The notes under the pieces were generated by a model. The model searched no databases. It had not been told where the DNA came from and saw only the letters and a program-made list of their open reading frames with translations. From positions 124,001-188,000 of the IMG/VR virus record IMGVR_UViG_3300049793_000366: DNA of 64,000 bases. One strand, given 5' to 3'. Made by a program: the position numbers and the translations under genes. Positions 24,028-61,846 of the stretch are shown here, piece after piece. Numbering within the stretch: position 1 is the stretch's first letter; each line of letters starts with the position of its first letter.

Positions 24028-24669
24028 ATGGTTGGATATATTTTAATAGGCTTAGTTGTTGTCGGACTGACAATCGGACTTTGTAAGTATTGTGGTTATA
24101 ATCCCTTTGCTAAGAAGAAAACTCAAACTAAATTAGTCTCTGTTACCAATGAACAAGGTGAAGAGGTTATAGTTAAAGTTGAAGTAAAAGAAGAAGTGAA
24201 GAAGTATATGAAAATAGAAGAGTTTGATGTGAAGAAAGAAACTGCTCAGTTATTTTCAAACACATTCTATTCGATAATGAATGAAGCGGGTTGGAAAATG
24301 TCTCATTGGTACGACAGTATTAAATTTGAGAAAGAAGACAAGACTCGTCCGATAAGAAAATGGTGTACTTATACTAAAACCCATGTTAATGAGTTTTTAA
24401 AATTATGTGTTGAGGTAAATTACGAATTTAACCACAAGACTGGTCTAATGAGTATGAAGAAGACCGAGTTAGAGTGTGATACTAAATACACATTCGAGGG
24501 TGAATATGATGAAGAATTTGTCGATTATATTTATAATTGCTATTATGCTCATAAAACCGCTGAAAACAAGCAGAAACAAGACGCATTTGATAATTCATGT
24601 AGAACCATAAACAGCATTTTAGGGAAAACTGTTGAACGTGGTAGTAAACTTAATGAACTTTTGAAATAA
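24028..24669 (+). CDS. Membrane-anchored hypothetical protein with C-terminal RxxKLxxLL tag
   Basis: N-terminal TM; ends VERGSKLNELLK. Confidence 0.65.
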   Translation: MVGYILIGLVVVGLTIGLCKYCGYNPFAKKKTQTKLVSVTNEQGEEVIVKVEVKEEVKKYMKIEEFDVKKETAQLFSNTFYSIMNEAGWKMSHWYDSIKFEKEDKTRPIRKWCTYTKTHVNEFLKLCVEVNYEFNHKTGLMSMKKTELECDTKYTFEGEYDEEFVDYIYNCYYAHKTAENKQKQDAFDNSCRTINSILGKTVERGSKLNELLK

Positions 24670-24677
24670 AATAAGTA

Positions 24678-25007
24678 ATGTATTTATTAGTGCTAATACT
24701 GGGTAGTATTTTAGGGATAATTCTCTATAAGAAAGTCCCTGTATGGTTACATCACTACAAACCAGTTTTTTTCCCACCGAGAAAAACATATGAAATTCAA
24801 TTCAGACTTACTTGGTTATCACAGCCAAGTATATTCACCACTGATTTAAATGGTGATTTAGTTAAAACGAAGCCAATTACTGTTAGAATTACTGCTGACT
24901 CAGAACATGACGCATTGATGTATTTAAACGAATTGATTTTACAAGAAACTAAACCTGACTTGATAGCAATTAAAGAAGCAGATGAACAGGTTCAAGTTAA
25001 TAATTGA
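24678..25007 (+). CDS. Membrane-anchored hypothetical protein
   Basis: N-terminal TM helix. Confidence 0.55.
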   Translation: MYLLVLILGSILGIILYKKVPVWLHHYKPVFFPPRKTYEIQFRLTWLSQPSIFTTDLNGDLVKTKPITVRITADSEHDALMYLNELILQETKPDLIAIKEADEQVQVNN

Positions 25008-25182
25008 TGCTTTATCAAGTCTCATTATCCCAAATGATGAAATAAGAAAATTAGCGCATAATCGTGCCGCTAAATGCTCAGAATGTCCTTTCAATAAACA
25101 TAATTTCTGTACAGAATGTAAATGTTTTATTCCATTAAAAATACTCTCAAAAAGAGATAGATGTCCTATTGACAAATGGTAA
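24982..25182 (+). CDS. Small Cys-rich zinc-binding-like protein
   Basis: CSEC...CTECKC...CPIDKW. Confidence 0.6.
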   Translation: MNRFKLIIDALSSLIIPNDEIRKLAHNRAAKCSECPFNKHNFCTECKCFIPLKILSKRDRCPIDKW

Positions 25183-25508
25183 AAATTCGTGATGCGTTTA
25201 ATATAACGGGTAGAGGTATAGTCATTGTCGTTGATTCATTTGTTAAATGGGTACACGGTGATGAATTAGTAATCATATTGGAGGACAGATACTTACATTA
25301 TAAATTAACTGGTATAGAAAGCTTTACTCGAATGTCTGGTGTAAATGATGATTCAACCAAGAATGGATTTTTATTAAAACCAATTGATGCTAATTTTTAT
25401 TTAGGTCTGAATTCAATTGAAAAGAAGAAATACACTACTTCGCTTATTGGTAAAGAGATTATAGCAAAAGCCGAGTTAAGAAATCATAAATTAAATAATT
25501 TGCTATAA
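25176..25508 (+). CDS. Hypothetical protein with C-terminal RxxKLxxLL tag
   Basis: N-terminus resembles EF-Tu domain II start (DAFNITGRGIV); ends ELRNHKLNNLL. Confidence 0.55.
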   Translation: MVKIRDAFNITGRGIVIVVDSFVKWVHGDELVIILEDRYLHYKLTGIESFTRMSGVNDDSTKNGFLLKPIDANFYLGLNSIEKKKYTTSLIGKEIIAKAELRNHKLNNLL

Positions 25509-25544
25509 ACTTGCAAATTAGATATAATGTCCGTATATTTGTAT

Positions 25545-26165
25545 ATGGAAAAACATAATAAACTTCAGATTTCGCTTCGCTATTGGTTATTGGGTATAGC
25601 TCAAGAAAACCCAGAATACTACAAATGTATTGAAGCGATGGAATTTGCTTCTAAATTCCATAGTGGTAAAAGAAAAGATGGTGTAACTCCTGAGTTTACA
25701 CATCAGTTGACAATCGCGCATTATATCCGAACAATCAAAAACTCTTTGATGTTTCCTGCTGACACAATTACAACGGTTTTCTTACACGATGTACCAGAAG
25801 ATTATGATGTTGCCATTCCAGAAATACAAAATCTTTTCGGTGAAAGAGTAGCACACTCTACGTGGTTACTTACAAAATTTCACAAAGGAGTTAAGAAAAC
25901 TGATGAAGTCTACTTCGGTGATATGGCTAAAGATCCAATCGCATCAATTGGTAAAGGTGGTGATAGAATGCACAATCTTCAAAGTATGGTTGGAGTGTTT
26001 ACTATACCTAAGCAAAAAGACTATGTGAAAGAAGCAGAGGATAAAATTAAACCTATGATGAAAGAAGCACGTAGATTGTTTCCTCAGCAAGAATTAGCGT
26101 ATGAAAATACTAAACTAATTATCAATTCACAGATTGAATTAATCAAAGCTACCTGGGTTAAATAA
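25545..26165 (+). CDS. Small alarmone hydrolase-like (RelA/SpoT HD domain, Mesh1-like)
   Basis: FASKFHSGKRKDGVTPEFTH, LHDVPED, FGERVA, KGGDRMHNL; promoter TATATTTG 25534-25541 implies start at ATG 25545. Confidence 0.8.
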   Translation: MEKHNKLQISLRYWLLGIAQENPEYYKCIEAMEFASKFHSGKRKDGVTPEFTHQLTIAHYIRTIKNSLMFPADTITTVFLHDVPEDYDVAIPEIQNLFGERVAHSTWLLTKFHKGVKKTDEVYFGDMAKDPIASIGKGGDRMHNLQSMVGVFTIPKQKDYVKEAEDKIKPMMKEARRLFPQQELAYENTKLIINSQIELIKATWVK

Positions 26166-28937: not shown

Positions 28938-29387
28938 GTGCATAAAGAACTACAGACCCTACTACAAACCGATACTATACTTGTACGTAGGTTATCATAC
29001 CGTAAAGTATTAATAGAGTATTCCGTGCCTGTTTTAGTAGAGGGTTCATCCGAACCTATTGAACAGGTTTATATAAAACTTCGCTATCAGATAGCTCCTG
29101 AGTTTTTAGATTCAGAGAGTCAGTCTATTCTTCCCGTATCTCAAATCAGATGCTTGATAAAGGATAAGTCCTATGACTATCCAATGCGTAATATTAATGG
29201 ACGCTGGGGTGTCAAAAGAACAACAGTTAAATGTATTCAAACTTTGAATAAAACAATAAGTTTAGGAAATGTCCTTTATGTTCTAAACTTTTTTCCAACT
29301 GAATATCAAATAGTTACGCAAGAGTCGGTCAATCGAGTGACAACTAAGTTAAGAGAAATTCATTTAAGTAGATTATTAACCTCTTAA
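28938..29387 (+). CDS. Hypothetical protein with C-terminal tag variant
   Basis: Ends KLREIHLSRLLTS. Confidence 0.5.
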   Translation: MHKELQTLLQTDTILVRRLSYRKVLIEYSVPVLVEGSSEPIEQVYIKLRYQIAPEFLDSESQSILPVSQIRCLIKDKSYDYPMRNINGRWGVKRTTVKCIQTLNKTISLGNVLYVLNFFPTEYQIVTQESVNRVTTKLREIHLSRLLTS

Positions 29388-29910: not shown

Positions 29911-31833
29911 ATGCACAGTATCTTAGATTTTATGAGCAATTATTGGTGGATTGGAGCTATTTTATTAGCACTGGTTGCCTACAAATTAATTTTCCGTTTA
30001 TTCGGTATCGTTATGATACCTGAGGATAAAATTGGATTAGTTACAAAGAAGTTTGTTTTACTTGGCGCGGATAAATCATTACCCGATGGTAGGATTATCG
30101 CAACTAAAGGTGAAGCAGGTTTTCAAGCAAAAGCAATGGCACCGGGTATTTATTTCTGGATGTGGCCATGGCAATATGAAATCGATATGCAAGGTTTCGT
30201 ATTAATTCCTGAGGGTAAAATTGGTTTAGTGGCTGCGAGAGACGGTGTTGTACCTCAAAATGGTAGAATACTTGGTCGTAAAGTATCTTGTGATAACTTC
30301 CAAGATAGTGAGCAGTTCTTAACTAATGGTGGACAGAAAGGTCGTCAGTCGGCATATCTTGTTGCTGGTTCTTACCGTATCAATACACACTTATTTGAAG
30401 TGTCTGTTGTTGACCAGGTTAAGATTAATGAGAACATGGTGGGTATTGTTACTACTCTTGATGGTGAGCCTCTTGATGATGGACAAATCGCTGCTAAAGT
30501 AAATGAAGCAGGGCATAATAAGTTCCAAAACTTTGATGTGTTTCTTGAGAATGGTGGACAAAGAGGTTTACAACAAGACGTAATTCTTGCTGGTACTTAT
30601 AACATCAATCCTTGGGCTGTTCAGATTGAAGAAGTTCCAATGACAAGTATCGCAATTGGATTTGTTGGTGTTGTTATCTCTTATGTAGGTAGCGAAGGAC
30701 AAGATGTATCTGGTACTGCTTTCAAACATGGTAACATCGTTAGTAAAGGACAGAAGGGTGTTTGGAATGAACCATTAGGTCCAGGAAAATATCCTATCAA
30801 TACATATGCTTATCGCATTGAAGTTGTTCCAACAACAAACCTTGTATTAAACTGGGCAAGCGCGAGAACTGAATCACACAACTTAGATAAGAACTTAAGT
30901 ACTATCACAGTACGTTCTAAAGATGGTTTCCCATTCAATTTAGATGTGTCTCAAATTATTCACATTCCAATGACAGAAGCACCTAAAGTAATTGCGCGAT
31001 TTGGTGCTATGCAAAACTTAGTTTCTCAAGTACTTGAGCCAACTATTGGTAACTATTTCCGTAACTCTGCTCAAGATTCAGATGTAATCTCTTTCTTAAG
31101 CTCTCGTAAAGAGCGTCAGGAGTCTGCTAAACAGCATATCTCTAAAGTTCTTGAAGAGTATAACGTTCACGCTGTTGATACGCTTATAGGTGATATTACA
31201 CCTCCTGAGTCACTTATGAAAACTCTTACTGACCGTAAGATTGCTGAAGAGCAAAAAGTAACATATGAAACTCAGCGTAAAGCACAAATCGAGCGTCAAT
31301 CTTACGAGAAAGAAAATGCTGTTGCTGATATGCAAAAGGATGTAGTTAAAGCTGACCAGTCAGTATTAATTGCTGATAAAACTGCTCAAGCTTCTATTAA
31401 GCAAGCAGAAGGTAATGCTAAGTCAGTAGAGCTTAACGCTAATGCTGATGCGAATGCTACTAAATTACGTGCTGGTGCCGAAGCAGAAAGAATTACCTTA
31501 ACTGGTAATGCCGAAGCAGAAAGAACATTAGCGATTGGTAAGTCTAACGCAGAAGCTTATAAACTTGCTGTTGAAGCAATGGGTGAAGAAAACTTTACTC
31601 GCCTTAAAGTAACAGAAGCTATTGGTATTAATAAAGTACAGGTAATTCCTAACGTACTTATCAATGGTGGTGGTAACGGAAGCGGTTCATTAGAAGGTAT
31701 GATGAGCCTTCAAATGATGGAAATGATGAGCGAAAAGGGTTACTTAAATAAAAAAGACATCAAGGATGTCAAAGAAGTAACATCTAAAGCTGTTGTTGAA
31801 GAGAAAGCAGAAGACGACAAGAAGAAGAAGTAA
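29911..31833 (+). CDS. SPFH/band-7 flotillin-like membrane protein
   Basis: N-terminal TM, repeated GxxGxQ..L.PGxY units, ITVRSKDGFPFNLDV SPFH core, AEA-rich flotillin coil. Confidence 0.85.
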   Translation: MHSILDFMSNYWWIGAILLALVAYKLIFRLFGIVMIPEDKIGLVTKKFVLLGADKSLPDGRIIATKGEAGFQAKAMAPGIYFWMWPWQYEIDMQGFVLIPEGKIGLVAARDGVVPQNGRILGRKVSCDNFQDSEQFLTNGGQKGRQSAYLVAGSYRINTHLFEVSVVDQVKINENMVGIVTTLDGEPLDDGQIAAKVNEAGHNKFQNFDVFLENGGQRGLQQDVILAGTYNINPWAVQIEEVPMTSIAIGFVGVVISYVGSEGQDVSGTAFKHGNIVSKGQKGVWNEPLGPGKYPINTYAYRIEVVPTTNLVLNWASARTESHNLDKNLSTITVRSKDGFPFNLDVSQIIHIPMTEAPKVIARFGAMQNLVSQVLEPTIGNYFRNSAQDSDVISFLSSRKERQESAKQHISKVLEEYNVHAVDTLIGDITPPESLMKTLTDRKIAEEQKVTYETQRKAQIERQSYEKENAVADMQKDVVKADQSVLIADKTAQASIKQAEGNAKSVELNANADANATKLRAGAEAERITLTGNAEAERTLAIGKSNAEAYKLAVEAMGEENFTRLKVTEAIGINKVQVIPNVLINGGGNGSGSLEGMMSLQMMEMMSEKGYLNKKDIKDVKEVTSKAVVEEKAEDDKKKK

Positions 31834-42206: not shown

Positions 42207-42514
42207 AGCGGATTAAATATGATATATTGTCGGATATGCTGATTGATATGCTGTCCATCGAAGAGTCATTTTATACCAAACATAAAGATAAACCATCGGT
42301 TAATTATGAGATAGTTAAACAATCTTGTAGGTTCAATATTGATGATAATGGAAAGAAGTCATTTGTTACATCCCTTAGTTCGTTGTATAAACACACTAAA
42401 AACTATGGGGCTAAACTACATAATCGAGGATTATATCATTTAAATGAAGAAGAGATAGAAATTGATATTGATAAAAGAATAAATAGAGCTTACAATCTCA
42501 ATAGATTATTATGA
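42191..42514 (+). CDS. Hypothetical protein with C-terminal tag variant
   Basis: Ends INRAYNLNRLL. Confidence 0.55.
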   Translation: MSEPLERIKYDILSDMLIDMLSIEESFYTKHKDKPSVNYEIVKQSCRFNIDDNGKKSFVTSLSSLYKHTKNYGAKLHNRGLYHLNEEEIEIDIDKRINRAYNLNRLL

Positions 42515-42861
42515 TAAAGATAGCATTAAATATTGGATATAGTAGCCCTAATTTTGGTGGCTCGATACTGAATACCTTCCCATTTATGTGGGAATTTAAT
42601 TCGGTTAGAGAGTGCTTTGACTGGATTAGAACACAAGCATTCAATTTTCTTACTTGGTCATATCATCAACACGTACCTAAATCCTCTATGTGCTTATATT
42701 TATACATGGAAGATGAAGAGAATTTCTGGGAATATAAAATAATGTGTGCTAATATCAGAGAGTATAAAGCTATTATGTCATACACCAGAGAAGACATTGA
42801 GGTTAAAATGAGGGAATCTACAATTGATAGTATTTTAATTGAAGAGAAAACAAATGATTAA
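42511..42861 (+). CDS. Hypothetical protein with C-terminal tag variant
   Basis: KMRESTIDSIL near C-terminus. Confidence 0.55.
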   Translation: MIKIALNIGYSSPNFGGSILNTFPFMWEFNSVRECFDWIRTQAFNFLTWSYHQHVPKSSMCLYLYMEDEENFWEYKIMCANIREYKAIMSYTREDIEVKMRESTIDSILIEEKTND

Positions 42862-42881: not shown

Positions 42882-43238
42882 ATGATAAGAAGTAAAATAC
42901 TAAACTCTACATCACCAAAAGACTTAACGACTGATGGTAAACAGGTTGAATTAGTAACAATAGGACTTTTTAGTACTACGACACAATTGTGGAAGTACTA
43001 TGTTTGTTCAGTTGTTGGTAGTAACAATAATTATAAAATGACTACTGATTTACATACGTTTGCTTCCACTGCTACGAATGATAACGTTGAGAGCTATGGT
43101 AAGCAATTTAAAACAGTAGATGAAGCTAAGAAGTTTATAGATAACTTCAGAGATAAGTGGGAAACAGGTTCGAATGAACCAAAGCAAGAAGTCCGAGACG
43201 CTAAGATTAAGGATATTCTACAAGAAACAGAAAATTAA
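42882..43238 (+). CDS. Hypothetical protein with C-terminal tag
   Basis: EVRDAKIKDILQETEN. Confidence 0.6.
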   Translation: MIRSKILNSTSPKDLTTDGKQVELVTIGLFSTTTQLWKYYVCSVVGSNNNYKMTTDLHTFASTATNDNVESYGKQFKTVDEAKKFIDNFRDKWETGSNEPKQEVRDAKIKDILQETEN

Positions 43239-45029: not shown

Positions 45030-45557
45030 ATGAAGTTACAAGAGTGGCAATCGAAAATGCTTACCAATCCAAATGTGCGAGTGAAGGAATTCCTCGCACA
45101 CTATGGGATTGATAAAATAAGCAAGATGGATGAATTTACCTTTAAGCACAGCTTATCTCATCATACTAAATTTTCATATGATGAACAGTGTCAATTTTGG
45201 ATGGATAAAGTATTTGAGTGTGTTTATTATGTAGATTATTCAAATCCTGATTTACTGAGTCATTTTCTAATCTATGATGATGGTGAATATTGGGTATTCG
45301 AAAATAAAATGGGAAGAGCCAGTTATTGTGTATATCGACTAGACCATAGACATATTGAATATGATGATAGGGTTGATAAATACACATTTATTGCTAATTG
45401 GAAACGTCAAATAGAGACGACATTTTATATCAGATTATATGATGTTGAGTTTGCACATCAGTTTCTTGAAAATATACTTGATAGAAGAGTAGAGTTTAAA
45501 AAAGACTACGTGCGTTCACTTAAAAGAAATGAAAAACTTAAAAATATTTTAAAATGA
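45030..45557 (+). CDS. Hypothetical protein with C-terminal tag
   Basis: Ends LKRNEKLKNILK. Confidence 0.6.
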   Translation: MKLQEWQSKMLTNPNVRVKEFLAHYGIDKISKMDEFTFKHSLSHHTKFSYDEQCQFWMDKVFECVYYVDYSNPDLLSHFLIYDDGEYWVFENKMGRASYCVYRLDHRHIEYDDRVDKYTFIANWKRQIETTFYIRLYDVEFAHQFLENILDRRVEFKKDYVRSLKRNEKLKNILK

Positions 45558-45981: not shown

Positions 45982-46827
45982 ATGAGATATATTGATAACC
46001 GATACTGTATAGGTAAAGTAAGAAGACTATTTAAAGAAGCTCCTGAGTCACTGAAAGACTGTGTTGTAGAGTTTTGTAGAATATTAGAAGAAGTGAAAGC
46101 TAGTTGTGGCGAACCAAGTTATAGTATTAAAGAAGACTTCTTTAAAATATGGTCTGGGTACTATAATAGAAAAACTGAATTTATGATTCTTAGACATAAA
46201 ACAATATTCACAAAAGAATCATTTGAGTTAAAGGTCGAGTTTAAATTCAACAAAGAGGTTGGTTATAAAAAATATAGTTGGGAGGATAGATACCAAGCGG
46301 CTAAGGATATTTCGGAGTGGCAAAACAAACCAGATGCCTTACCACCAGATGAATCTTTCAGGGAGACGATTAGAGGATATAATGAGTATGGTACGGATTG
46401 GAGTAGTTACTGTTGTAATGAAGTTTCAAAGAAATGTATAGAGAAAGCACTAACATTATACGATGAGTTTTGTTTTTTACGTGAGTATGGATTTTCAATA
46501 TCAACGTATGCGGTTGCTGATGGTGGTCACGCATACAAGAGACCGCCTGATACATCTCGTTCTGGTGTTACTATGACTATTTCATATCAAAATAAAGATT
46601 TGGAAATTGAATTATCTGAATATAATGGTGTAATGACAGTTGAGACTATGCTTATAACTGAGGGTTGGAATGAAGAGAAGAATCAACACGAGAATGAGTA
46701 CTACCAGCACTATGACAGCGAAGGTGGTGAAAATATCAATTCATATTCGGACATTAAACCATATATTGATATTATGGCACCTGGTGTATTACGAGGCCAG
46801 AAATTAGAGGACATTTTAGGTAATTAA
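45982..46827 (+). CDS. Hypothetical protein with C-terminal tag
   Basis: Ends VLRGQKLEDILGN. Confidence 0.6.
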   Translation: MRYIDNRYCIGKVRRLFKEAPESLKDCVVEFCRILEEVKASCGEPSYSIKEDFFKIWSGYYNRKTEFMILRHKTIFTKESFELKVEFKFNKEVGYKKYSWEDRYQAAKDISEWQNKPDALPPDESFRETIRGYNEYGTDWSSYCCNEVSKKCIEKALTLYDEFCFLREYGFSISTYAVADGGHAYKRPPDTSRSGVTMTISYQNKDLEIELSEYNGVMTVETMLITEGWNEEKNQHENEYYQHYDSEGGENINSYSDIKPYIDIMAPGVLRGQKLEDILGN

Positions 46828-48372: not shown

Positions 48373-48672
48373 ATGGAATATAACGGTCAAACAAAAAAGG
48401 AATACGAGAAAAACTTCACACGTATTCGTGATATTATCACTAAGGCTGATGGTGATAAGGAAAAAGCTCTTCGACTTGCTAAAACACAAGCAGACAGAAT
48501 AGAAGATGAATATAAAGCAATCAATCGTTCAAATGCCGCAGTAAAGCTTGGACATGAGTGGTTAGCTGACCCTTTCTTCGAAAGAGCTTATGAGCTTGGT
48601 GCTGTGGGTAAAATGGAGTACCGCGAATACAAGCTTAAGAAATTATTTGAAATGCAAGAAGAAGGAGCCTAA
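48373..48672 (+). CDS. Hypothetical protein with C-terminal tag
   Basis: EYREYKLKKLF. Confidence 0.6.
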   Translation: MEYNGQTKKEYEKNFTRIRDIITKADGDKEKALRLAKTQADRIEDEYKAINRSNAAVKLGHEWLADPFFERAYELGAVGKMEYREYKLKKLFEMQEEGA

Positions 48673-49134: not shown

Positions 49135-49399
49135 AAATTTAGTATTTTGTTCAAGTATATATGGTACTAAACTGACTGGTAGAAAGGATGTGAAATTTTT
49201 AGAAGTACATTATGGTAGCGATAAAGATTTTATTGAAAAGTATCAGAAAATTTACCCAAATCATCGAAAGGGAATATTCTTAGATGCTAGAAAACCTGTA
49301 CCGAGAGATTTCAGACTCGATGTTGAACATATGATTAAGTCAGACCCACTGTTAATTCAAACAATTCGTGATTTAAAGCTTGAAGAGTTATGTCAATAG
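49118..49399 (+). CDS. Hypothetical protein with C-terminal tag
   Basis: Ends TIRDLKLEELCQ. Confidence 0.55.
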   Translation: MVILYKNLVFCSSIYGTKLTGRKDVKFLEVHYGSDKDFIEKYQKIYPNHRKGIFLDARKPVPRDFRLDVEHMIKSDPLLIQTIRDLKLEELCQ

Positions 49400-49770
49400 A
49401 AGAGAAAATATTCATATATGGGTTTATGTTTATTATGCTTGGTGTTCTATACTTCATCGGATTTTTTATACGTGACTATAAACAAAAGTATCTACGTAAT
49501 AAAAGAATGCAGAGGTTGAATTGGAATAAGGTATTGAAAATATTCGCGTGTGTTACTGGATTTTGTTTACTTGGTTCTATCAACAATAAAATGTTTACTT
49601 GGTATGAAGCTCCGATAATGGGATTTACTATCACTGCTGTGATTTTGTTTGCTGGTATATTTAGACCAGAGAATGATACAAATGAGTATAAACAATTCGA
49701 TAATCCTGAGTTTAAGGTATATGAGAAAGCACATCAGAGAGATAGAAAAATTAAAGATATTTTAAAATGA
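49390..49770 (+). CDS. 3-TM membrane protein with C-terminal tag
   Basis: Ends HQRDRKIKDILK. Confidence 0.6.
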   Translation: MSIEEKIFIYGFMFIMLGVLYFIGFFIRDYKQKYLRNKRMQRLNWNKVLKIFACVTGFCLLGSINNKMFTWYEAPIMGFTITAVILFAGIFRPENDTNEYKQFDNPEFKVYEKAHQRDRKIKDILK

Positions 49771-50321: not shown

Positions 50322-50575
50322 ATAAAGTACTACACTTTGATAATTCGAGAATAGAACTATCGCAAACTGGTCTTTGTTTTACTGCCTTTTTCTACACGAA
50401 TGATAGCGAGAAACCTTGTTTTCATTTTAAATTTTATTCGGATGGAAAGTCGATAATTGAGGATTTTAAGAAGGAAGCTCGTAACTATATGTCAACCAGT
50501 ATATTGACTGATTTTATCAACAAAAACCCTGATGTATTACGGACAATTAATTTTGATAATTTAATTGTTAATTGA
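50306..50575 (+). CDS. Hypothetical protein with C-terminal tag variant
   Basis: Ends VLRTINFDNLIVN. Confidence 0.5.
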   Translation: MVTQVNKVLHFDNSRIELSQTGLCFTAFFYTNDSEKPCFHFKFYSDGKSIIEDFKKEARNYMSTSILTDFINKNPDVLRTINFDNLIVN

Positions 50576-51247: not shown

Positions 51248-51259
51248 AATATAAATACT

Positions 51260-52686: not shown

Positions 52687-53090
52687 AAAAATTAACAGCT
52701 TATGTTGTATTCGAAAAGGGGTACGAGTACAATGACGAAATTTATCACTTACCTGATGTAAGCGGTGGTGATCCAAAGAGAGTAACATTCTCAAAAGAAG
52801 ATGCTAAGAATCTTATTACTGTGTTGAGCAGAGATTCATTCAGAGGATTGGATATTGGTAATTATACATATGACCTAAAAGATGTAGTTGATGAAATATC
52901 TCTAAAAGAGATATTCAAAATCAATAAGTGGAAATGGGATGAAGATAATTTAACTGTTCCTGAGAAAGCAACCGATGAACAAATCGATGAGGTTATGAAA
53001 TTTATTGATTTACAGTTTTATGACTTTCAGGAAGTTGAAATGGATATTGCATCAATGCGTAATGCAAAAATAGAAATAGTAGAAAGCTAA
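52683..53090 (+). CDS. Hypothetical protein with C-terminal tag variant
   Basis: Ends SMRNAKIEIVES. Confidence 0.55.
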   Translation: MKKLTAYVVFEKGYEYNDEIYHLPDVSGGDPKRVTFSKEDAKNLITVLSRDSFRGLDIGNYTYDLKDVVDEISLKEIFKINKWKWDEDNLTVPEKATDEQIDEVMKFIDLQFYDFQEVEMDIASMRNAKIEIVES

Positions 53091-55448: not shown

Positions 55449-57167
55449 GTGAATCTTAGTGAAATTACATATAGTAAAGTTAGAGCGGAAATAGAAACGT
55501 ACTTAAAAGACACCTATAATAAGGCTGGTGTTTTATTTTCACCTGCTTCGCCGTATGGTCAAATATTGAATGTGATGGAGAGTTTATATCAATATTCATT
55601 CCTTTACTTAAAGAACTCTATTAATCAATTCGACCTTAGCTTACCAAACTCTAATAATAAAAAGATTATTAGAAATGCTGCTATTTTCGCAGGACACATA
55701 CCTGGTCGCTCTATATCTGCTACTGGAACACTTAGATTTCACTTAAAGTCTGATATTGATATTGAAAAAGAAATACCTGGAAATAGAATAACATTATTTG
55801 ATAAGACAGCTATTAAGAATAAACAAAATGGTTTAGAATATATCATTAATCTTGGTGCTGAGAAAATATCATATAAAGTATCACCGGGATTTCAATTCTT
55901 CGCGAGTCTTACACAAGGTAAGTGGGACACCCAGATTTTAACTGGTAGTGGTCAACAAAATCAAACATTCCAGATTAATAATCCTGGTGGTCAAAAGGAG
56001 ATTGAGAATTTCAATATCACTGTGACTGTAAATGGTGACTTATGGGTGGTTAAAAAGCATCTATATGATATGTTACCAGATGAGAACGCTTGTGTTGTTA
56101 GAACAGGGTTTAATGGTGGTATAGACGTTATATTTGGTAATGGTGGCTTCGGTGCTATTCCAACTTTAGGAGCTGAAATAAAAGTGTCGTATATTATAAC
56201 TGATGGTTCGAGAGGATCTATTTTCAGAAGAACATTAAATGATTGGAAGATATTGGATAATGTTATGGATGGATTTGGAAACACTATCGACTTAGCTAAG
56301 ATATTTGACATCTATATACACACTGACATTAACTTTGGTGCTGATTCAGAGTCAATTCAATTTACAAAAAATGTATTACCAATCGTAAGTAATAACTTCG
56401 TACTTGGTTTACCTCAGCAATATGCTTATGAAATTAAGAAGCTGGGAGTATTCTCACATATAAATGCATATGAAAAAGATGGTGTAATACACGTTGTTGC
56501 TACACCGAATATTAAAGTATTTAAAAATCAGAATGCTAATTACTTTACAGTTGATAAGAGAGCATTTGAATTAGATACTTATGAGAAGATTAAGATTGAT
56601 AAGTATCTTAGAACTGCTGGTAATATACAATTAACAAGAAAGTATAAGATAGTAGCACCAGTTTTATCATATTATATTATGAACGTATTTGTTATAACAT
56701 ATTCTGATTCAATTGATGATAATGTTAATAATCAAATCTATGATAAGGTATCTGAATACTTCTTAAATTTAAGTCGTTTGAATAGAATACCAAAACTTGA
56801 TTTAATAAAAGAGTTATCATCGATTGATGATATACACTCTGTTGATATTCAATTTGTATCGAAGAAGAATGAAGATTATCACAAGTCTAATAAGATAAAT
56901 GATGCCAATAGACGTAATCAATTCGCTGCTAAAGGCGCATTGCGTTTAAGCAGACCTTTCATTGGATATGATAAGAGTAAAGTTCTTGGTATAGATCCAG
57001 TCATGGGTGATATTATGTATGATAGTGAAGAGCTACCAATTATCAGAGGTGGTTGGTATGATAGAAACAATATTTATTACTCAGATAACGTAACATCAAG
57101 TGGATTCAGCTCAGTTAATATTATTAAAAAGGGAGTGGTTGATGCTAAACAAAGACCTAAATTCTAA
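55449..57167 (+). CDS. Baseplate wedge subunit (T4 gp6/baseplate J-like)
   Basis: ITYSKVRAEIETYLK, NAAIFAGHIPGRSISATG, VIFGNGGFGAIP..GAEIKVSY..TDG..G, GADSES. Confidence 0.72.
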   Translation: MNLSEITYSKVRAEIETYLKDTYNKAGVLFSPASPYGQILNVMESLYQYSFLYLKNSINQFDLSLPNSNNKKIIRNAAIFAGHIPGRSISATGTLRFHLKSDIDIEKEIPGNRITLFDKTAIKNKQNGLEYIINLGAEKISYKVSPGFQFFASLTQGKWDTQILTGSGQQNQTFQINNPGGQKEIENFNITVTVNGDLWVVKKHLYDMLPDENACVVRTGFNGGIDVIFGNGGFGAIPTLGAEIKVSYIITDGSRGSIFRRTLNDWKILDNVMDGFGNTIDLAKIFDIYIHTDINFGADSESIQFTKNVLPIVSNNFVLGLPQQYAYEIKKLGVFSHINAYEKDGVIHVVATPNIKVFKNQNANYFTVDKRAFELDTYEKIKIDKYLRTAGNIQLTRKYKIVAPVLSYYIMNVFVITYSDSIDDNVNNQIYDKVSEYFLNLSRLNRIPKLDLIKELSSIDDIHSVDIQFVSKKNEDYHKSNKINDANRRNQFAAKGALRLSRPFIGYDKSKVLGIDPVMGDIMYDSEELPIIRGGWYDRNNIYYSDNVTSSGFSSVNIIKKGVVDAKQRPKF

Positions 57168-57424: not shown

Positions 57425-57502
57425 ACATAAGTCGAAAAAGTAATAAAATAGAGGTATACATTTTAATATATAATTAATAATAAAAAATAAGATAAATCGA
57501 AG

Positions 57503-58239: not shown

Positions 58240-58503
58240 ATGCAAGAAGTATTAGAGAAAGTAGCAGAAGAAATTAAAAGACCTAAGAGTAGGAGAAGAA
58301 AAAAGGTAGTAAGGCTCATCACACCGGAGTTGATATCTGATATTGAGTCTGAGATAATAAAGATTGATTATTACTTAACTGGTAAATGCATACAGTTGCG
58401 TGGTAAGGGTTATCGTCCAAACGATGCTGATGAAGACCAACCAAAAAGACTCAGGTTAGAATATTTAAGGGAGTTGAGGTTGAGGCTAATGCAATTGTCG
58501 TAA
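58240..58503 (+). CDS. Hypothetical basic protein
   Basis: ORF. Confidence 0.5.
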   Translation: MQEVLEKVAEEIKRPKSRRRKKVVRLITPELISDIESEIIKIDYYLTGKCIQLRGKGYRPNDADEDQPKRLRLEYLRELRLRLMQLS

Positions 58504-58857
58504 TTTATAATCACGTATATTGTCTAATCCAACTATCAATTCATTACCACTATACGTGACACCGTTTGATAGTACAAATGTTGCGTTATCATTATTTGAA
58601 TCTTCATTTAGTGTAAGCTTTGAGTGGCTTATTCGATGGTCAAGTAAACCCTTATCATTATAGAACATTTCAACGGATACCTTGTTGTTACAATTTATAT
58701 TGGTTGCTGACGGGTCAATCATACTTTGTGCAATTTTATCAAAACCATCTGGTAGAGTTAATTCAATTGACATCATGAGGCGTTTGTTTTCTATCGTGAA
58801 TACTTCGCCAGTTTCTTTAACTAAAGCCTGTTCTTTATTTTCCATCGATATAAACAA
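58486..58857 (-). CDS. Hypothetical protein with C-terminal tag
   Basis: Ends NIRDYKLRQLH. Confidence 0.55.
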   Translation of the reverse strand: MFISMENKEQALVKETGEVFTIENKRLMMSIELTLPDGFDKIAQSMIDPSATNINCNNKVSVEMFYNDKGLLDHRISHSKLTLNEDSNNDNATFVLSNGVTYSGNELIVGLDNIRDYKLRQLH

Positions 58858-59059: not shown

Positions 59060-60037
59060 TTATTCAGCGAATGAAAGGTTAAGCTGTTCGATTGATTGTT
59101 TCTCTTCAAGACTAATAATAGCCCTTGCTATCATTTTGTCGCATGATATAACGTGTAACTTGTCGGATTGTTTATTAACAGCTATTGTGTCTGATATAAT
59201 CAATTCAGTTAATACAGAAGAGTTAAGATTCTCGATAGCATTTCCGGATAGAATACCATGTGTAGCAATAGCACGTACTGACCTAGCACCATTTTCCATT
59301 ACCAACTCACTTGCTTTCTTTAAAGTACCTAATGTATCAGCCATATCATCTATGATAACAACATTGCGGTCTTTTACATCAGCACCCATTAATTCCATTG
59401 AATGAATTTCATTTGGTTTAACTCGGCGTTTATTTATCTGAGCGAAGTGTGCTTCTGGGAAATATTTAGCAAAGTCTAATGCTCTTTTTACACCACCTTG
59501 GTCTGGTGACATTATTGTTAGATTTTCAAGAGCAAGTGACTTGATGTAGTTTGTGAAAATTTTACCACCATTTAAGTGAATAACTGGTATGTTGAAGAAT
59601 CCTTGAATTGCAGATGCGTGTAAATCAATTGTGATGATTCGTGTTGCTCCACCTCTTTCATAGGCATCAGCCATAACCCTTGCTCCAATTGATGAACGAA
59701 GGTGGTCTACCTTATCTTGACGTGAGTAACCATAATATGGTGTCACGAGTGTTATTTCTTTAGCACCAGCTCTTTTAGCAGCATCTAATATCAACATAGT
59801 TTCCACGATAGAATCAGAAGAACTTGTTGTTTGTATAATATAGATATCTTTACCACGCACAGACTCATTGAAAGTTGGGAATATCTCACCATCTTTGAAT
59901 TTCTCAATCTTTAAATCACCAAGACCCGTACTTTGTGGTGTCAGTAGACTTGTAGCTTGTTGCGACAATACGATTTTATTAATACTATCAGCGAGTGATT
60001 CGCTTGATGTTCCAGAAAAAATAGTGAATGTGTTCAT
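59060..60037 (-). CDS. prs: Ribose-phosphate pyrophosphokinase (PRPP synthetase)
   Basis: KFKDGE, ESVRG, PYYGYSRQDK, IDLHASAIQGFF, SPDQGG, KRR, VIIDDMADTLGT, ATHGILSG; likely start MNTFTIFSG (60037). Confidence 0.93.
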   Translation of the reverse strand: MNTFTIFSGTSSESLADSINKIVLSQQATSLLTPQSTGLGDLKIEKFKDGEIFPTFNESVRGKDIYIIQTTSSSDSIVETMLILDAAKRAGAKEITLVTPYYGYSRQDKVDHLRSSIGARVMADAYERGGATRIITIDLHASAIQGFFNIPVIHLNGGKIFTNYIKSLALENLTIMSPDQGGVKRALDFAKYFPEAHFAQINKRRVKPNEIHSMELMGADVKDRNVVIIDDMADTLGTLKKASELVMENGARSVRAIATHGILSGNAIENLNSSVLTELIISDTIAVNKQSDKLHVISCDKMIARAIISLEEKQSIEQLNLSFAE

Positions 60038-60047
60038 AATAGTGGTA

Positions 60048-60569
60048 TTAATTTTTTGATGAAATGTTTTCATTTAATAAAGAATTAAGTGTTATATCTC
60101 TATATACAGCTTGTAGTGTTGATTCATATACTTCATCATCATAAATGAATGTATCTGGTTTTATAAATTGTGCTAGCTTTAATCCTCTGTACATAAACCC
60201 ATTTGTAGTTAATTCCGGGTCTTCTTCTGTCAATACGAATGGTATGCTAATTGTGAATGATTCTATGGTTATGTCAGATGGGTATATTGCTGGTAGTGAT
60301 GGAAATCCTGTATTTGAACTGAAAAAGAAATATGATGCTTCTGTGCTTTTTGGTGTTGAAAATATTGTATTGGTGTGTATTGGTGTGTTGTTGAAGCTTA
60401 GTGTGATACTCAGCGGATAACCTTCTGGTGTTTTTATAAATTTAGATTTGAAGTTCTTATCTATTTCTTTAAAAATACCATCTTTGATTACAAGTTCAGT
60501 TAGGTCGATTTCCTCACTGGTTCTGTAAACGTCAATACTTACTGTTTTATAATTATATTTTCTCGTCAC
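60048..60569 (-). CDS. Hypothetical protein with C-terminal tag variant
   Basis: VYRDITLNSLLNE. Confidence 0.55.
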   Translation of the reverse strand: MTRKYNYKTVSIDVYRTSEEIDLTELVIKDGIFKEIDKNFKSKFIKTPEGYPLSITLSFNNTPIHTNTIFSTPKSTEASYFFFSSNTGFPSLPAIYPSDITIESFTISIPFVLTEEDPELTTNGFMYRGLKLAQFIKPDTFIYDDEVYESTLQAVYRDITLNSLLNENISSKN

Positions 60570-60918
60570 TTAGAACTTCATTAAGTTTGTTTCCTCTGTA
60601 AATTGACTTATTTGGTTTAGTCGTTTTATATATCTTATTAAGCCAAGTACCTAAGTCTAAAGCTTGTCTTGAATTATAATAATGTGAAGACCTCTCGCTA
60701 TAAAATTTGCTATGAATATCTTCTTGTTCATGTTCCTCGAAAGAGTCCCACCATACAGGATCTATTAGCATTTTAACCTGAGTACCAAATGTTTTTAATT
60801 GCCTTTTCTTCTCACGTCTTCTCGCTCTATCATTATGATATTGAGAATCTTCGTTGTCTTGCTTTTCTCTCCAACGTTGTACTTGAGGTTCATTTAAATA
60901 TCTGTTATTTTTCATCAT
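60553..60918 (-). CDS. Hypothetical protein with C-terminal tag
   Basis: IYRGNKLNEVLSDEKI. Confidence 0.55.
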   Translation of the reverse strand: MMKNNRYLNEPQVQRWREKQDNEDSQYHNDRARRREKKRQLKTFGTQVKMLIDPVWWDSFEEHEQEDIHSKFYSERSSHYYNSRQALDLGTWLNKIYKTTKPNKSIYRGNKLNEVLSDEKI

Positions 60919-61549
60919 TCAGTTTTGCTTTTTTCCAATTTTTAGTCCAGTGAACATCTGTTTGTACGTGTCCTTTTCTTACCCACTTCATAACACTTGT
61001 TGAAAAATCATCGTTGTGAAATGCGTCAGCTTTTCTTATAACAATACCTTCTCTTTTTCCACCAAGTATAGACTCTTTTTGTGATAACTCTTCTACGGTG
61101 CTTCTGAGTTCTTTCTCATTGGTGATAATACCATTGAAGAGTACGGGTGTTGTCGGAAGGTCTAAAAGAAATGAATATTCTTCAACAGTAGACCATGGTA
61201 CCCATATTTCACCATCGCGTACACCGAACATATAAAAATATGATTTTAGATTTGAATATTCGATAGAGTGTATACCATACATATTCTCACCGAAGATGTA
61301 AGTATCTAAATCTATTGAAAGTTTTATGCGTTGCCATATATCCCACATTGGTCTATCCCAAGCATTTTCGGAGTGAGCGGCATGAGAACGTCCGAATACA
61401 CCGTATCTTTCAAGTGTTGTGTTGGAGCCATCAAGTTTTTCAGTTATGATAACTGGTATATTCAATAGTGAATCTACTGAATGTGAAATACGGTCATCCG
61501 ATGTAGCACCGGGTGAGAACGGTAAGTGGTATGTTCTTGCGTATTTCAT
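60905..61549 (-). CDS. ATP-dependent RNA ligase-family protein
   Basis: KYARTYHLPFSPG, motif I TEKLDGSN, FGEN, FYMFGV, EGIVIR, KWVRKGH; minus-strand TATATTTG 61554-61561. Confidence 0.85.
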   Translation of the reverse strand: MKYARTYHLPFSPGATSDDRISHSVDSLLNIPVIITEKLDGSNTTLERYGVFGRSHAAHSENAWDRPMWDIWQRIKLSIDLDTYIFGENMYGIHSIEYSNLKSYFYMFGVRDGEIWVPWSTVEEYSFLLDLPTTPVLFNGIITNEKELRSTVEELSQKESILGGKREGIVIRKADAFHNDDFSTSVMKWVRKGHVQTDVHWTKNWKKAKLNDEK

Positions 61550-61600
61550 AGAACAAATATACGGAAAAACTATTAATTAACCAAGAATTATGGACAATAA

Positions 61601-61626
61601 AAAAAGACGCAATTAAGCGTCTTTTT
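61601..61626 (-). terminator. Intrinsic terminator
   Basis: AAAAAGACGC-aattaa-GCGTCTTTTT. Confidence 0.65.
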
Positions 61627-61846
61627 CTAATATTTCTGATAATCTTCTATCTCTATCTTCAAGTCTCTCTTCTATTATCCGTAACCTATCCGCTGCATTT
61701 CTATCCATAATTTCATACCAAGTGCCTGATTTATAGCTCATTACACGCTCTGATTTTATATCAAAGTAACAATCACCGTCCACTGGATTCGTGGGTTGTG
61801 ATTGGTGGAATGTAACATCCACGAGTGTATAATCACTAATAGACAT
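61613..61846 (-). CDS. Hypothetical protein with C-terminal tag
   Basis: Ends EDRDRRLSEILEKDA. Confidence 0.55.
   Translation of the reverse strand: MSISDYTLVDVTFHQSQPTNPVDGDCYFDIKSERVMSYKSGTWYEIMDRNAADRLRIIEERLEDRDRRLSEILEKDA

What the first reader, a model, noticed from the sequence alone, without database searches (positions are those of the whole stretch)
24028..61846. A shared C-terminal peptide tag R-[DNEG]-x-K-[LI]-x-x-[LI]-L on about 17 otherwise unrelated accessory proteins
Seen at or near C-termini: 24028 RGSKLNELL, 25176 RNHKLNNLL, 28938 REIHLSRLL, 42191 RAYNLNRLL, 42511 RESTIDSIL, 42882 RDAKIKDIL, 45030 RNEKLKNIL, 45982 RGQKLEDIL, 48373 REYKLKKLF, 49118 RDLKLEEL, 49390 RDRKIKDIL, 50306 RTINFDNLI, 52683 RNAKIEIV, 58486 RDYKLRQL, 60048 RDITLNSLL, 60553 RGNKLNEVL, 61613 RDRRLSEIL. 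The Arg uses varied codons (CGT, AGA, CGA, AGG, CGC, CGG), so conservation is at the peptide level, not a DNA repeat. It occurs on soluble and membrane proteins of the accessory blocks, but not on the recognisable enzymes or virion proteins. Inference: a phage-wide docking, localisation or degradation signal (amphipathic helix) read by one receptor, such as a host or phage AAA+ protease/adaptor (an AAA+ ATPase, a UVR-motif protein and a J-domain protein are in this window) or a phage compartment scaffold.
Basis: partly seen in the sequence, partly recalled or inferred. Interest (0 to 1): 0.85.

Follow-up and report, generated by a model that had tools for sequence, protein, structure and literature searches.

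The report
Proteome-wide C-terminal helix tag, megaphages
About one in six proteins of this soil megaphage and its closest relatives, all small, unrelated and of unknown function, end in the same short helix (R-D-x-K-L-x-x-L-L), which looks like a shared address label read by one still unknown partner; no paper I could search describes it.

Summary
All 17 peptides lie 0-8 residues from the stop of a called ORF. The strict pattern occurs 11 times in C-terminal tails, never internally, against 0.11 expected. A scoring matrix trained on another genome confirms 14 of the 17; three are weak (28938, 50306, 52683).

Conservation is at the peptide level: codon positions 1-2 are conserved, Arg and Leu codon families vary, and there is no DNA repeat family.

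The window comes from a Mahaphage-clade megaphage (soil; predicted Bacteroidetes hosts). The tag ends 157 of 963 ORFs in LR745206, and 14-22% of ORFs in samples of four other relatives. LR756504 uses variant versions. It is rare in LR756501 and essentially absent from samples of LR756500 and Lak-A1 (0 and 1 ORF).

Carriers are unrelated by BLAST and HHalign, none of 27 has a Pfam domain, and they diverge and turn over faster than their neighbours, yet keep the tag. In one family the tag is invariant and AlphaFold2 places it as a detached helix.

Best reading: a modular docking helix for one common partner, possibly a cargo-loading signal like the T4 capsid-targeting sequence. The partner is unidentified. 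The degron, membrane, translational and DNA-repeat readings are disfavoured.

The parts
24637..24663 (+). Tag RGSKLNELL, 1 residue before the stop of ORF 24028-24669 (213 aa, N-terminal hydrophobic segment)
   Evidence: Matrix score 16.6 bits. The C-terminal 84 aa match an 84-aa tagged ORF of LR745206. Hydrophobic segment.
25479..25505 (+). Tag RNHKLNNLL, directly before the stop of ORF 25176-25508 (110 aa)
   Evidence: 15.8 bits. No Pfam family.
29352..29378 (+). Weak or doubtful tag REIHLSRLL, near the end of ORF 28938-29387 (149 aa)
   Evidence: Only 4.6 bits with the independent matrix.
42485..42511 (+). Tag RAYNLNRLL, at the end of ORF 42191-42514 (107 aa)
   Evidence: 15.5 bits. The orthologue in L022 ends RSYNISRLL.
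42811..42837 (+). Degenerate tag RESTIDSIL, 7 residues before the stop of ORF 42511-42861 (116 aa)
   Evidence: 11.6 bits. The L022 orthologue carries a canonical RGLKIDEVL followed by D and the stop.
43194..43220 (+). Tag RDAKIKDIL of ORF 42882-43238 (118 aa)
   Evidence: 23.2 bits. The last 24 aa are invariant in 7 homologues whose bodies are about 54% identical. AlphaFold2: body pLDDT mostly 70-90 (a dip to 56-57 over residues 51-70); residues 98-118, which include helix 103-117, have pLDDT below 50.
45525..45551 (+). Tag RNEKLKNIL of ORF 45030-45557 (175 aa)
   Evidence: 20.9 bits. The L022 orthologue has I in place of R (INEKLKNILR), so the Arg is not immutable.
46792..46818 (+). Tag RGQKLEDIL of ORF 45982-46827 (281 aa, the largest carrier)
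   Evidence: 9.6 bits. Identical tag in the L022 orthologue. No Pfam family.
48622..48648 (+). Tag REYKLKKLF of ORF 48373-48672 (99 aa), followed by a 7-residue tail
   Evidence: 21.5 bits. All 25 database homologues keep the tag, and most end KLGI or KLGL. AlphaFold2: pLDDT 94, all-alpha, last helix 80-98 contains the tag.
49367..49390 (+). Tag RDLKLEEL of ORF 49118-49399 (93 aa)
   Evidence: 12.0 bits. The gene is absent from the syntenic relative L022.
49738..49764 (+). Tag RDRKIKDIL of ORF 49390-49770 (126 aa, two hydrophobic segments)
   Evidence: 23.7 bits, the best in the window. The gene is absent from L022. Hydrophobic segments.
50540..50566 (+). Doubtful tag RTINFDNLI of ORF 50306-50575 (89 aa)
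   Evidence: 1.6 bits. The L022 orthologue is truncated here and ends ...VVRAFKL.
53058..53081 (+). Doubtful or decaying tag RNAKIEIV of ORF 52683-53090 (135 aa)
   Evidence: 5.2 bits. The L022 orthologue reads RNAQIERTE.
58492..58515 (-). Tag RDYKLRQL of ORF 58486-58857 (123 aa)
   Evidence: 11.4 bits. Homologues in LR745206 (REYKIKNII) and L022 (RDYKIENIN) keep the core.
60075..60101 (-). Tag RDITLNSLL of ORF 60048-60569 (173 aa), followed by an 8-residue tail
   Evidence: 16.1 bits.
60571..60597 (-). Tag RGNKLNEVL of ORF 60553-60918 (121 aa)
   Evidence: 17.3 bits. The LR745206 homologue ends RERMIDNVLK.
61628..61654 (-). Tag RDRRLSEIL of ORF 61613-61846 (77 aa)
   Evidence: 18.9 bits.

Best explanation
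The motif is the core of a modular alpha-helix of about 14 residues. It is often N-capped, with consensus [ST]-x-x-[ED]-h-R-[DEN]-x-K-[LI]-x-x-[LI]-[L/G/I]-x followed by the stop. It is attached, almost always at the C-terminus, to a very large and fast-evolving set of small, mutually unrelated ORFan proteins in a subclade of the largest Mahaphage megaphages.

It most likely works as a docking peptide. One face of the helix (R0, K3, L/I4, L/I7, L8) would bind a groove on one common partner, so that every tagged protein is brought to the same place or machine while its variable body does something different.

The concrete scenario I rank first (about 0.2-0.25 on its own) is a sorting or cargo-loading signal. 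It would load an arsenal of small effector proteins into a phage-built structure, most plausibly the procapsid, for co-injection. That would make it the functional analogue of the T4 capsid-targeting sequence, which is the only conserved element of otherwise diverse T-even internal proteins.

Shown: the motif is real, acts at the peptide level, is modular, is under purifying selection, is helical, and is detached from the body in one family.

Inferred: that a receptor exists, what it is, and what docking achieves.
For: - Enrichment far beyond chance, replicated in independent genomes. Window: 11 strict hits against 0.11 expected. LR745206: 97 against 1.1. With the position matrix: 14 of 94 window ORFs (>=8 bits), 157 of 963 ORFs in LR745206 (>=14 bits), and at >=10 bits 20% of ORFs in 94 kb of LR756502, 22% in 50 kb of LR756504, and 14-17% in two further contigs of 591-709 kb.
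- Peptide-level selection: codon families vary; 31 of 98 tag codons changed synonymously against L022, and a smaller share of residues changed in the tags than in the bodies (0.27 vs 0.37); no DNA repeat family.
- Modularity: the 98 carrier bodies of LR745206 form 97 BLAST components. No paralogy among window carriers. HHalign of LR756504 families gives body probabilities below 1%, while families F1 and F3 match at 92% over the last 19 residues only. The two AlphaFold2 models have different folds.
- The tag is conserved as well as or better than the body: 92% against 54% identity in family A3, and it is kept in all 25 homologues of family A1.
- Only 4 of 17 window carriers have any homologue in LR745206, against 41 of 77 other ORFs, and all four homologues keep the tag.
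- A conserved helix that is not packed on its own body: residues 98-118 have pLDDT below 50 while the body is mostly 70-90.
- Position flexibility: 26 of 183 high-scoring sites in LR745206 are internal or near the N-terminus.
- Lineage-specific variants keep the same R0/h4/h7 spacing (LR756504: EYRKxIIxxLL and RKxRIxxLNL; LR756501: RTELIDxIL). This fits co-evolution with a phage-encoded partner.
Against: - No receptor was found. Nothing here shows binding, localisation or packaging.
- Against the capsid scenario in particular: about 150-190 different packaged proteins would be unprecedented. Carriers are mildly acidic (median pI 5.4). About 6% carry an N-terminal hydrophobic segment. They sit among metabolic, early-looking genes rather than in a structural module. 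No consistent protease site precedes the tag.
- Lak-A1 and LR756500, which belong to the same clade, essentially lack the tag in the samples read (0 of 134 and 1 of 108 ORFs).
- In family A1 the tag helix is modelled with high confidence, so it may pack on its own body.
- The region just upstream of the tag is generally not linker-like.
Confidence: 0.5

Rival explanations
1. Degron or adaptor tether. The helix is recognised by a host or phage AAA+ protease, unfoldase or chaperone. Either it destroys these proteins on schedule, or it tethers them as adaptors that deliver host targets (compare the SspB XB peptide with ClpX, or the ESCRT-III MIM1 helix with the Vps4 MIT domain).
For: - C-terminal position, with a basic and hydrophobic helix face.
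- Variable bodies joined to a conserved tail fit an adaptor architecture.
- The window encodes an AAA protein, a UVR-motif protein and an HPD-motif protein.
Against: - The last residues and tail length vary (0-9 residues; D, K, N, I or E), so a free C-terminal end is not being read.
- 14% of sites are not C-terminal.
- The AAA protein is only weakly Hda/DnaA-like and has no match in the PDB.
- The HPD protein has no Pfam J-domain hit at E<=0.001.
- The i, i+3/4, i+7 spacing indicates a helix, not the extended peptide that DnaK or ClpX bind (inference from established knowledge).
Confidence: 0.15
2. No common receptor. The helix is a structural or oligomerisation element. Either it is a capping or dimerising helix inherited by an extremely divergent paralogous superfamily, or the tags pair with each other so that carriers assemble together.
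For: - Tandem arrays of similar-sized ORFs and small paralogous families in LR756504.
- Charges flank a hydrophobic stripe and could be self-complementary (inference).
- The tag helix is modelled confidently in family A1.
- Upstream residues are structured rather than linker-like.
Against: - Bodies are unrelated even by profile-profile comparison and have different predicted folds.
- Carrier lengths range from 66 to 731 aa.
- The tag is detached and of low confidence, yet invariant, in family A3.
- Invariant R and K on the same face as the leucines suggest one specific partner surface.
Confidence: 0.15
3. Co-translational signal. The nascent peptide acts inside the ribosome at or near termination, by pausing or by coupling to the overlapping downstream gene. 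Comparable cases are TnaC-type arrest peptides and the T4 gene 60 nascent-peptide signal.
For: - Most tags end 1-2 residues before the stop.
- Carriers overlap the next gene more often than other small ORFs (60% vs 36%) and use TGA more often (30% vs 18%).
Against: - The distance to the stop varies from 0 to 9 residues, and all three stop codons are used.
- Internal and N-terminal copies exist.
- 22% of carriers are the last gene of a same-strand run.
- The higher overlap rate is expected for genes sitting inside dense arrays of small genes.
Confidence: 0.05
4. Membrane-targeting amphipathic helix of the MinD or FtsA type.
For: Short C-terminal helix with basic and hydrophobic residues.
Against: - Hydrophobic moment 0.20, below the random median of 0.30. 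Mean hydrophobicity -0.28.
- An acidic residue is conserved at +1 and polar residues at +5 and +6.
- This degree of sequence conservation is not typical of lipid-binding helices (established knowledge).
Confidence: 0.03
5. Chance, compositional bias at AT-rich gene ends, or a DNA-level repeat read in one frame.
For: - The genome is AT-rich (about 32% G+C), which favours K, I, L and N.
- One pair of tags is 80% identical over 41 nt (family D3).
Against: - Shuffles of the same tails give 0.11 hits against 11 observed.
- Arg and Leu codon families vary.
- 11 of the 12 six-frame hits are in the coding frame at C-termini.
- The enrichment is replicated in independent genomes.
Confidence: 0.01

Closest known systems
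T4 capsid-targeting sequence (CTS) of the T-even internal proteins
   Same: A short conserved terminal peptide is the only element shared by an otherwise diverse, fast-evolving set of small phage proteins (PMC3012670). Here too the carriers are unrelated, turn over between close relatives and keep only the tag.
   Different: The CTS is N-terminal. By my own recollection of the T4 literature, it is removed by the prohead protease at an (L/I)-x-E site and marks a handful of proteins. This tag is C-terminal, has a different sequence, has no consistent cleavage site and marks about 15-22% of all ORFs. Packaging is untested.
Encapsulin cargo-loading peptides and microcompartment encapsulation peptides
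   Same: Short, mostly C-terminal (encapsulin) or terminal helical (microcompartment) peptides that dock unrelated cargo to the inside of a protein shell. Encapsulin shells share the HK97 capsid fold (established knowledge).
   Different: No sequence similarity to the Gly/Ser-Leu-rich encapsulin peptides. Cargo genes are not adjacent to a shell gene. The number of cargo types is orders of magnitude higher. No shell partner was identified.
P22 and herpesvirus scaffolding-protein C-terminal coat-binding helices
   Different: Those occur on one dedicated scaffolding protein. A profile of 83 tags found no such chain in the PDB.
SspB XB peptide with ClpX, and the ESCRT-III MIM1 helix with the Vps4 MIT domain
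   Same: C-terminal tethering peptides that link variable proteins to the N-domain of an AAA+ machine. MIM1 ((D/E)xxLxxRLxxL(K/R)) is a C-terminal basic and leucine-containing helix (established knowledge).
   Different: Different spacing and consensus. The only AAA protein in the window is weakly Hda/DnaA-like. No MIT-like or ClpX-like partner was found.
Poxvirus ankyrin/PRANC (F-box-like) multigene families
   Same: Large, rapidly evolving viral gene families in which a variable body is joined to a short conserved C-terminal element that plugs into one hub (established knowledge).
   Different: PRANC is a domain of about 40-50 residues on homologous ankyrin bodies, and it targets a eukaryotic ubiquitin ligase. 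Here the bodies are unrelated and the element is about 14 residues.
Protein A Z-domain helix 2 (best PDB sequence match)
   Same: An N-capped helix reading ...NEEQRNAKIKSI... resembles the consensus.
   Different: E = 0.9, so not significant. It only shows that the tag looks like an ordinary capped helix.

Membership tests
T4-type capsid-targeting sequence | Shared terminal peptide on otherwise unrelated, variable small phage proteins | tested here: met
   Bodies are unrelated. The tag is conserved.
T4-type capsid-targeting sequence | N-terminal position with a prohead-protease site (L/I-x-E) at its end | tested here: not met
   86% of sites are C-terminal. Upstream columns show no consistent L/I-x-E: E at -2 in 15 of 98, K is the commonest residue at -4.
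T4-type capsid-targeting sequence | Tagged proteins are present inside virions | not testable with these tools
   Needs virion proteomics. Only a DNA run of a soil metagenome holds the sequence.
Encapsulin cargo-loading peptide | C-terminal position on cargo | tested here: met
Encapsulin cargo-loading peptide | Gly/Ser-Leu-rich consensus, and cargo gene next to the shell gene | tested here: not met
   The consensus is R-[DEN]-x-K-[LI]-x-x-[LI]-[LGI]. Carriers are spread over the whole genome.
C-terminal degron of the ssrA / ClpX C-motif type | Fixed final residues read together with the free carboxylate | tested here: not met
   Tails of 0-9 variable residues follow the motif. Internal and N-terminal copies exist.
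Membrane-targeting amphipathic helix (MinD/FtsA type) | High hydrophobic moment, with the basic face separate from the hydrophobic face | tested here: not met
   Hydrophobic moment 0.20 against a random median of 0.30. Mean hydrophobicity -0.28.
Short linear / helical docking motif (SLiM or MoRF) | Short; found on unrelated proteins; conserved more than its surroundings; not packed on its own domain | tested here: inconclusive
   Met in family A3: invariant, pLDDT below 50. Not clearly met in family A1: similar conservation, pLDDT 80-94. Upstream residues are not generally linker-like.
Short linear / helical docking motif (SLiM or MoRF) | A defined binding partner | not testable with these tools
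   No multimer prediction is available. Phyletic checks of two conserved window proteins did not track the tag.
DNA repeat or mobile cassette end | Conservation at the nucleotide level, independent of reading frame | tested here: not met
Any Pfam / PDB family | Significant profile match of the carriers or of the tag | tested here: not met
   0 of 27 C-terminal carriers have a Pfam family. Tag profile against the PDB: best E = 0.87. Foldseek of both models: nothing at E<=0.001, best E about 0.4.

The most novel reading that the evidence does not exclude
A virus-encoded protein sorting code on a proteome scale. In a subclade of the largest known phages, roughly one protein in six carries a C-terminal helical 'zip code' read by a single phage-encoded receptor. 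The receptor gathers more than 150 different, rapidly evolving effector proteins into one structure, such as the procapsid for co-injection or another phage-built compartment. Lineage-specific tag dialects (RDxKIxxIL, EYRKxIIxxLL, RKxRIxxLNL, RTELIDxIL) would be co-evolving with that receptor.
Probability: 0.35. Interest if true: 0.9.

Novelty: new variant of a known kind. Interest (0 to 1): 0.8.

Why it matters
Megaphage genomes are mostly dark matter. Here a simple sequence rule groups about 15-22% of the ORFs of several 0.6-0.7 Mb phages into one functional class, although these proteins share nothing else.

If the tag is a docking or sorting signal, three things follow:
- It gives a direct handle for finding the receptor, by peptide pull-down or a structure-prediction screen.
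- It defines the phage's deployable effector set.
- It could be used to direct foreign proteins to the same destination.

It would also be the first proteome-scale targeting signal described in a bacterial virus, and a clean natural example of a short motif spreading over unrelated, fast-evolving proteins. Even under the rival readings, it is a strong and previously unreported constraint on megaphage gene evolution.

Tried and rejected
- Megablast of the tag block against the phage collection: no match.
- Pfam on all 17 window carriers and on the 10 largest LR745206 carriers: nothing.
- Pfam on proteins with internal strict hits: the hits in SpoVR and two helicases lie in recognised enzymes. 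They may be among the roughly six strict matches my own estimate from residue frequencies expects by chance, although two score above 15 bits.
- ESM Atlas search with the last 27 residues: only generic helices.
- PDB sequence search with the AAA protein: none. NCBIfam: weak Hda-like match only.
- Foldseek of both AlphaFold2 models against the PDB: nothing at E<=0.001, best E about 0.4.
- Profile of 83 tags against the PDB: nothing significant.
- Profile of 22 tags (30 columns) against 1.84 billion representative proteins: only two unrelated long proteins with 7-10 matched stretches. The profile is too short to be useful.
- tmRNA idea (does a phage tmRNA encode a similar tag, given SmpB in the window?): no tmRNA in the window or in LR745206, and no Rfam hit in the window.
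- Stop-codon recoding as an artefact: no suppressor tRNA in LR745206, all three stop codons are used, and coding density is 94% with the standard code.
- Phyletic profiling of two highly conserved unknown proteins inside the tagged block (44100-44660 and 55449-57167): their distributions do not follow the tag.
- Protease-site idea (L/I-x-E before the tag): not consistent.
- Six literature searches (one further query was rejected for a too-short term) and two papers checked: no description of the tag.
- RNA evidence: only one DNA run (soil metagenome) holds the sequence, so no reads were laid.

Full report
**What the window is.** The window has about 32% G+C and is densely coding. Its large ORFs find their best relatives in the curated huge-phage genomes LR756502.1 (642 kb) and LR745206.1 (635 kb). 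Weaker matches follow in LR756504, LR756501/LR756503, LR756500 and the Lak Prevotella megaphages. These are the largest members of the 'Mahaphage' clade, which are predicted to infect Bacteroidetes (PMC7162821).

The source contig is IMGVR_UViG_3300049793_000366 (508 kb). An identical protein also sits on a 711.8-kb contig. The only public run holding the sequence is a soil metagenome.

Recognisable genes in the window are typical megaphage auxiliary genes:
- SLT transglycosylase, GNAT, a MetRS-like enzyme, Dam methylase and an AAA protein
- guanylate and dephospho-CoA kinases, an HD domain protein and NT5C
- an SPFH protein, an S1-domain protein and a UVR-motif protein
- a NAD-salvage set, NUDIX, SmpB, RNA ligase and PRPP synthetase

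**Checking the observation.** All 17 peptides exist. Each lies 0-8 residues before the stop of a called ORF.

The strict pattern R[DNEG].K[LI]..[LIV] occurs 11 times in the last 20 residues of the 94 ORFs and never in 18,540 internal positions. Shuffling each ORF's own last 16 residues, which keeps the local K/I/L/N-rich composition, gives 0.11 +/- 0.33 hits. N-terminal, middle and reversed controls give none. Of 12 strict hits in all six frames, 11 are these C-termini.

For a non-circular test I trained a position matrix on a different genome (LR745206). It scores 14 window ORFs at 8 bits or more at the C-terminus, against 2 of 18,164 internal positions. Two of these (50306 and 52683) are decayed or truncated in a close relative.

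The conservation is on the peptide. Codon positions 1 and 2 are conserved, while position 3 and the Arg and Leu codon families vary. Against the syntenic relative L022, 31 of 98 tag codons changed synonymously, and residues changed less often in the tags than in the bodies (0.27 vs 0.37). No multi-copy DNA repeat covers the tags.

**The phenomenon is far larger than the finding.** I fetched the whole of LR745206.
- 98 of its 963 ORFs carry the strict motif in the last 20 residues, and 21 further hits lie elsewhere.
- The looser core marks 189 ORFs, against 30 in shuffles.
- The matrix finds 157 C-terminal and 26 non-C-terminal sites at 14 bits or more.

At 10 bits or more, the same matrix marks 20% of ORFs in 94 kb of LR756502 and 22% in 50 kb of LR756504. 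It marks 14% and 17% in two 20-kb samples of other giant contigs (709 kb and 591.5 kb). It marks about 1% in 150 kb of LR756501, none of 134 ORFs in 100 kb of LR756500, and 1 of 108 in 100 kb of Lak-A1.

Columns that the regex did not fix are also informative:
- S, T or F at -5; K, I or L at -4; S or Q at -3; I, L or Y at -1
- N, K or D at +5; L, G or I at +8

The whole reads as an S/T-x-x-E-type N-cap followed by a helix of about 14 residues. The helix ends 1-2 residues before the stop in 63 of the 98 strict carriers.

Subtypes coexist in LR745206...KIxxIL[DNK]...KLxxLGI, and RKxKIx[KN]IF on ORFs of 41-83 aa. LR756504 uses two other dialects, FxTxxE[YH]R[KE]xIIxxL[LI] and [ND]RKx[RK]IxxL[NK][LI]. 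These sit in tandem arrays of 70-110-aa ORFs and keep the same R0/h4/h7 spacing. LR756501 has a rare RTELIDx[IV]L form.

**Who carries it.** Carriers are small (median 107 aa against 155 aa for other ORFs). They are mostly soluble (6% have an N-terminal hydrophobic segment) and mildly acidic.

None of 27 scanned C-terminal carriers has a Pfam family. In contrast, 23 of 53 scanned non-carriers in the window have a family.

Their bodies are unrelated:
- no paralogy among window carriers
- 97 BLAST components among the 98 LR745206 carriers
- HHalign probabilities below 1% between bodies of LR756504 families, while two families match at 92% over the last 19 residues only

They are also evolutionarily volatile. 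Only 4 of 17 window carriers have a homologue in LR745206, against 41 of 77 other ORFs. All four homologues keep the tag. Against the close relative L022, carriers are roughly 62% identical against roughly 75% for their neighbours. Two carriers (49118 and 49390) are simply absent, one orthologue has lost the Arg, and one has a more canonical tag than the window copy.

Within families the tag is retained. All 25 homologues of ORF 48373 keep it. In the ORF 42882 family the last 24 residues are invariant while the body is about 54% identical.

**Structure.** AlphaFold2 models the 48373 family as an all-alpha protein whose last helix (residues 80-98) contains the tag (pLDDT 94). It models the 42882 family as a beta-plus-alpha body, mostly at pLDDT 70-90 with a dip to 56-57 over residues 51-70. 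Residues 98-118, a short connector plus helix 103-117 (the tag), have pLDDT below 50. That is a helix not fixed to its own body, although it is the most conserved part of the sequence. Neither body matches a solved fold at E<=0.001.

On a helical wheel R0, K3, L4, L7 and L8 share one face. The hydrophobic moment is therefore low (0.20 against 0.30 for random 10-mers) and the mean hydrophobicity is negative. The conserved surface is mixed basic and hydrophobic. That is typical of a protein-binding face and not of a lipid-binding helix.

**Interpretation.** The simplest account of these facts is a docking helix read by one common partner, with the variable bodies providing diverse activities. 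The facts it has to explain are:
- a short helix on unrelated, rapidly changing proteins
- purifying selection on the peptide
- conservation above the body, and detachment from it, in at least one family
- mostly C-terminal but position-tolerant placement
- lineage-specific dialects

The closest precedent in phages is the T4 capsid-targeting sequence. [quoted passage not shown] Encapsulin and microcompartment targeting peptides and scaffolding-protein C-terminal helices show that terminal helices can load cargo into HK97-type shells (established knowledge).

I therefore rank a cargo-loading or sorting signal first among the concrete scenarios, at only about 0.2-0.25. The reasons for caution are the number of carriers (about 150-190), their acidity, the few with hydrophobic N-termini, their genomic setting among early-looking metabolic genes, and the lack of a cleavage site. 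All of these argue against simple encapsidation.

The other readings:
- The degron or adaptor reading is possible but not favoured. The free end is not being read, and no suitable ATPase is evident.
- A self-association or structural role cannot be excluded.
- A nascent-peptide role is unlikely, given variable spacing to the stop and internal copies. Carriers do overlap the next gene more often (60% vs 36%).
- Membrane targeting, chance and a DNA repeat are rejected by direct tests.

**Limits.**
- The ORF calls are my own greedy longest-ORF calls. They agree with the independent gene calls shown for L022.
- Only LR745206 was read in full. The other relatives were sampled.
- No multimer prediction, proteomics or expression data were available, so the receptor and the purpose of the tag remain inferred.
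- I found no paper describing this tag in the searchable library. That is not proof that none exists.

Noticed in passing
window 47147-52114, 53090-53626, 59060-60073: A NAD+ salvage and synthesis set lies interleaved with tagged ORFs: NAPRTase (47147-48346), a cytidylyltransferase-like, probably NMNAT, enzyme (49767-50321), an isochorismatase/PncA-like enzyme (50630-51247), NadE (51260-52114), NUDIX (53090-53626) and PRPP synthetase (59060-60073, minus strand). It is conserved in synteny in L022. It could be a counter to NAD-depleting host defences.
   Followed up: partly
window 53782-54219: A phage-encoded SmpB (Pfam E = 6e-53). ARAGORN and Rfam find no tmRNA in the window, and ARAGORN finds none in the complete relative LR745206.
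   Followed up: partly
L019 (LR756500.1) 11601-17016: Six adjacent ORFs (198-369 aa) all end in a different shared C-terminal peptide...NADDFGFFDN (acidic plus aromatic). It is reminiscent of SSB-type C-terminal tips. This is a second, unrelated C-terminal 'tag' in a megaphage that lacks the R-x-x-K-L tag.
   Followed up: no
L017 (LR756504.1) 20371-21421: Mini-ORFs of 56-64 aa with hydrophobic, transmembrane-like tails alternate with tagged 85-89-aa ORFs of one family, like a repeated two-gene cassette. In the window, tagged ORF 48373-48672 is likewise followed by a 67-aa hydrophobic ORF (48672-48875) that is absent from L022.
   Followed up: no
L010 (LR745206.1) 38300-38965 and L001 (LR756502.1) 7175-7771: A conserved protein of about 200-220 aa carries the best-scoring tag of the whole genome (28.9 bits, IKQYLRDIKINQIL) internally at residue 56. 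It sits between a short N-terminal part and a C-terminal region that I only guess by eye to be RecA/KaiC-like. Pfam finds nothing.
   Followed up: partly
window 4103-5368: The MetRS-like class I tRNA synthetase is 82% identical to its LR745206 homologue, well above every other homologue pair found between the two genomes (25-75%; most neighbouring genes 30-55%). This suggests strong constraint or recent exchange.
   Followed up: no
window 43647-43679, 55069-55101, 57462-57494: An AT-rich intergenic motif (TTAATATATAAA...) recurs upstream of three same-strand genes. It is a candidate promoter-like element.
   Followed up: no
window 19754-20386 (minus strand): A 210-aa protein with an HPD tripeptide in a J-domain-like context, conserved in LR745206 at 42% identity, but with no Pfam DnaJ hit at E<=0.001.
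   Followed up: partly
window 29911-31833: A 640-aa SPFH/Band 7 protein with no BLAST homologue (E<=1e-4) in the complete relative LR745206, so it is a lineage-specific accessory gene.
   Followed up: no
window 9975-14348, 34609-38571 and 38575-41775 (all minus strand): Three very large ORFs (1457, 1320 and 1066 aa) have no Pfam family but are conserved in LR745206 (28%, 42% and 62% identity). The last two lie in conserved synteny with the S1-domain and UVR-motif genes.
   Followed up: no
whole window (protein P0026): A protein identical to ORF 42882-43238 is recorded on a contig of 711,805 bp. The IMG/VR source contig is 507,910 bp, so the phage genome may be about 0.71 Mb, among the largest known.
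   Followed up: no
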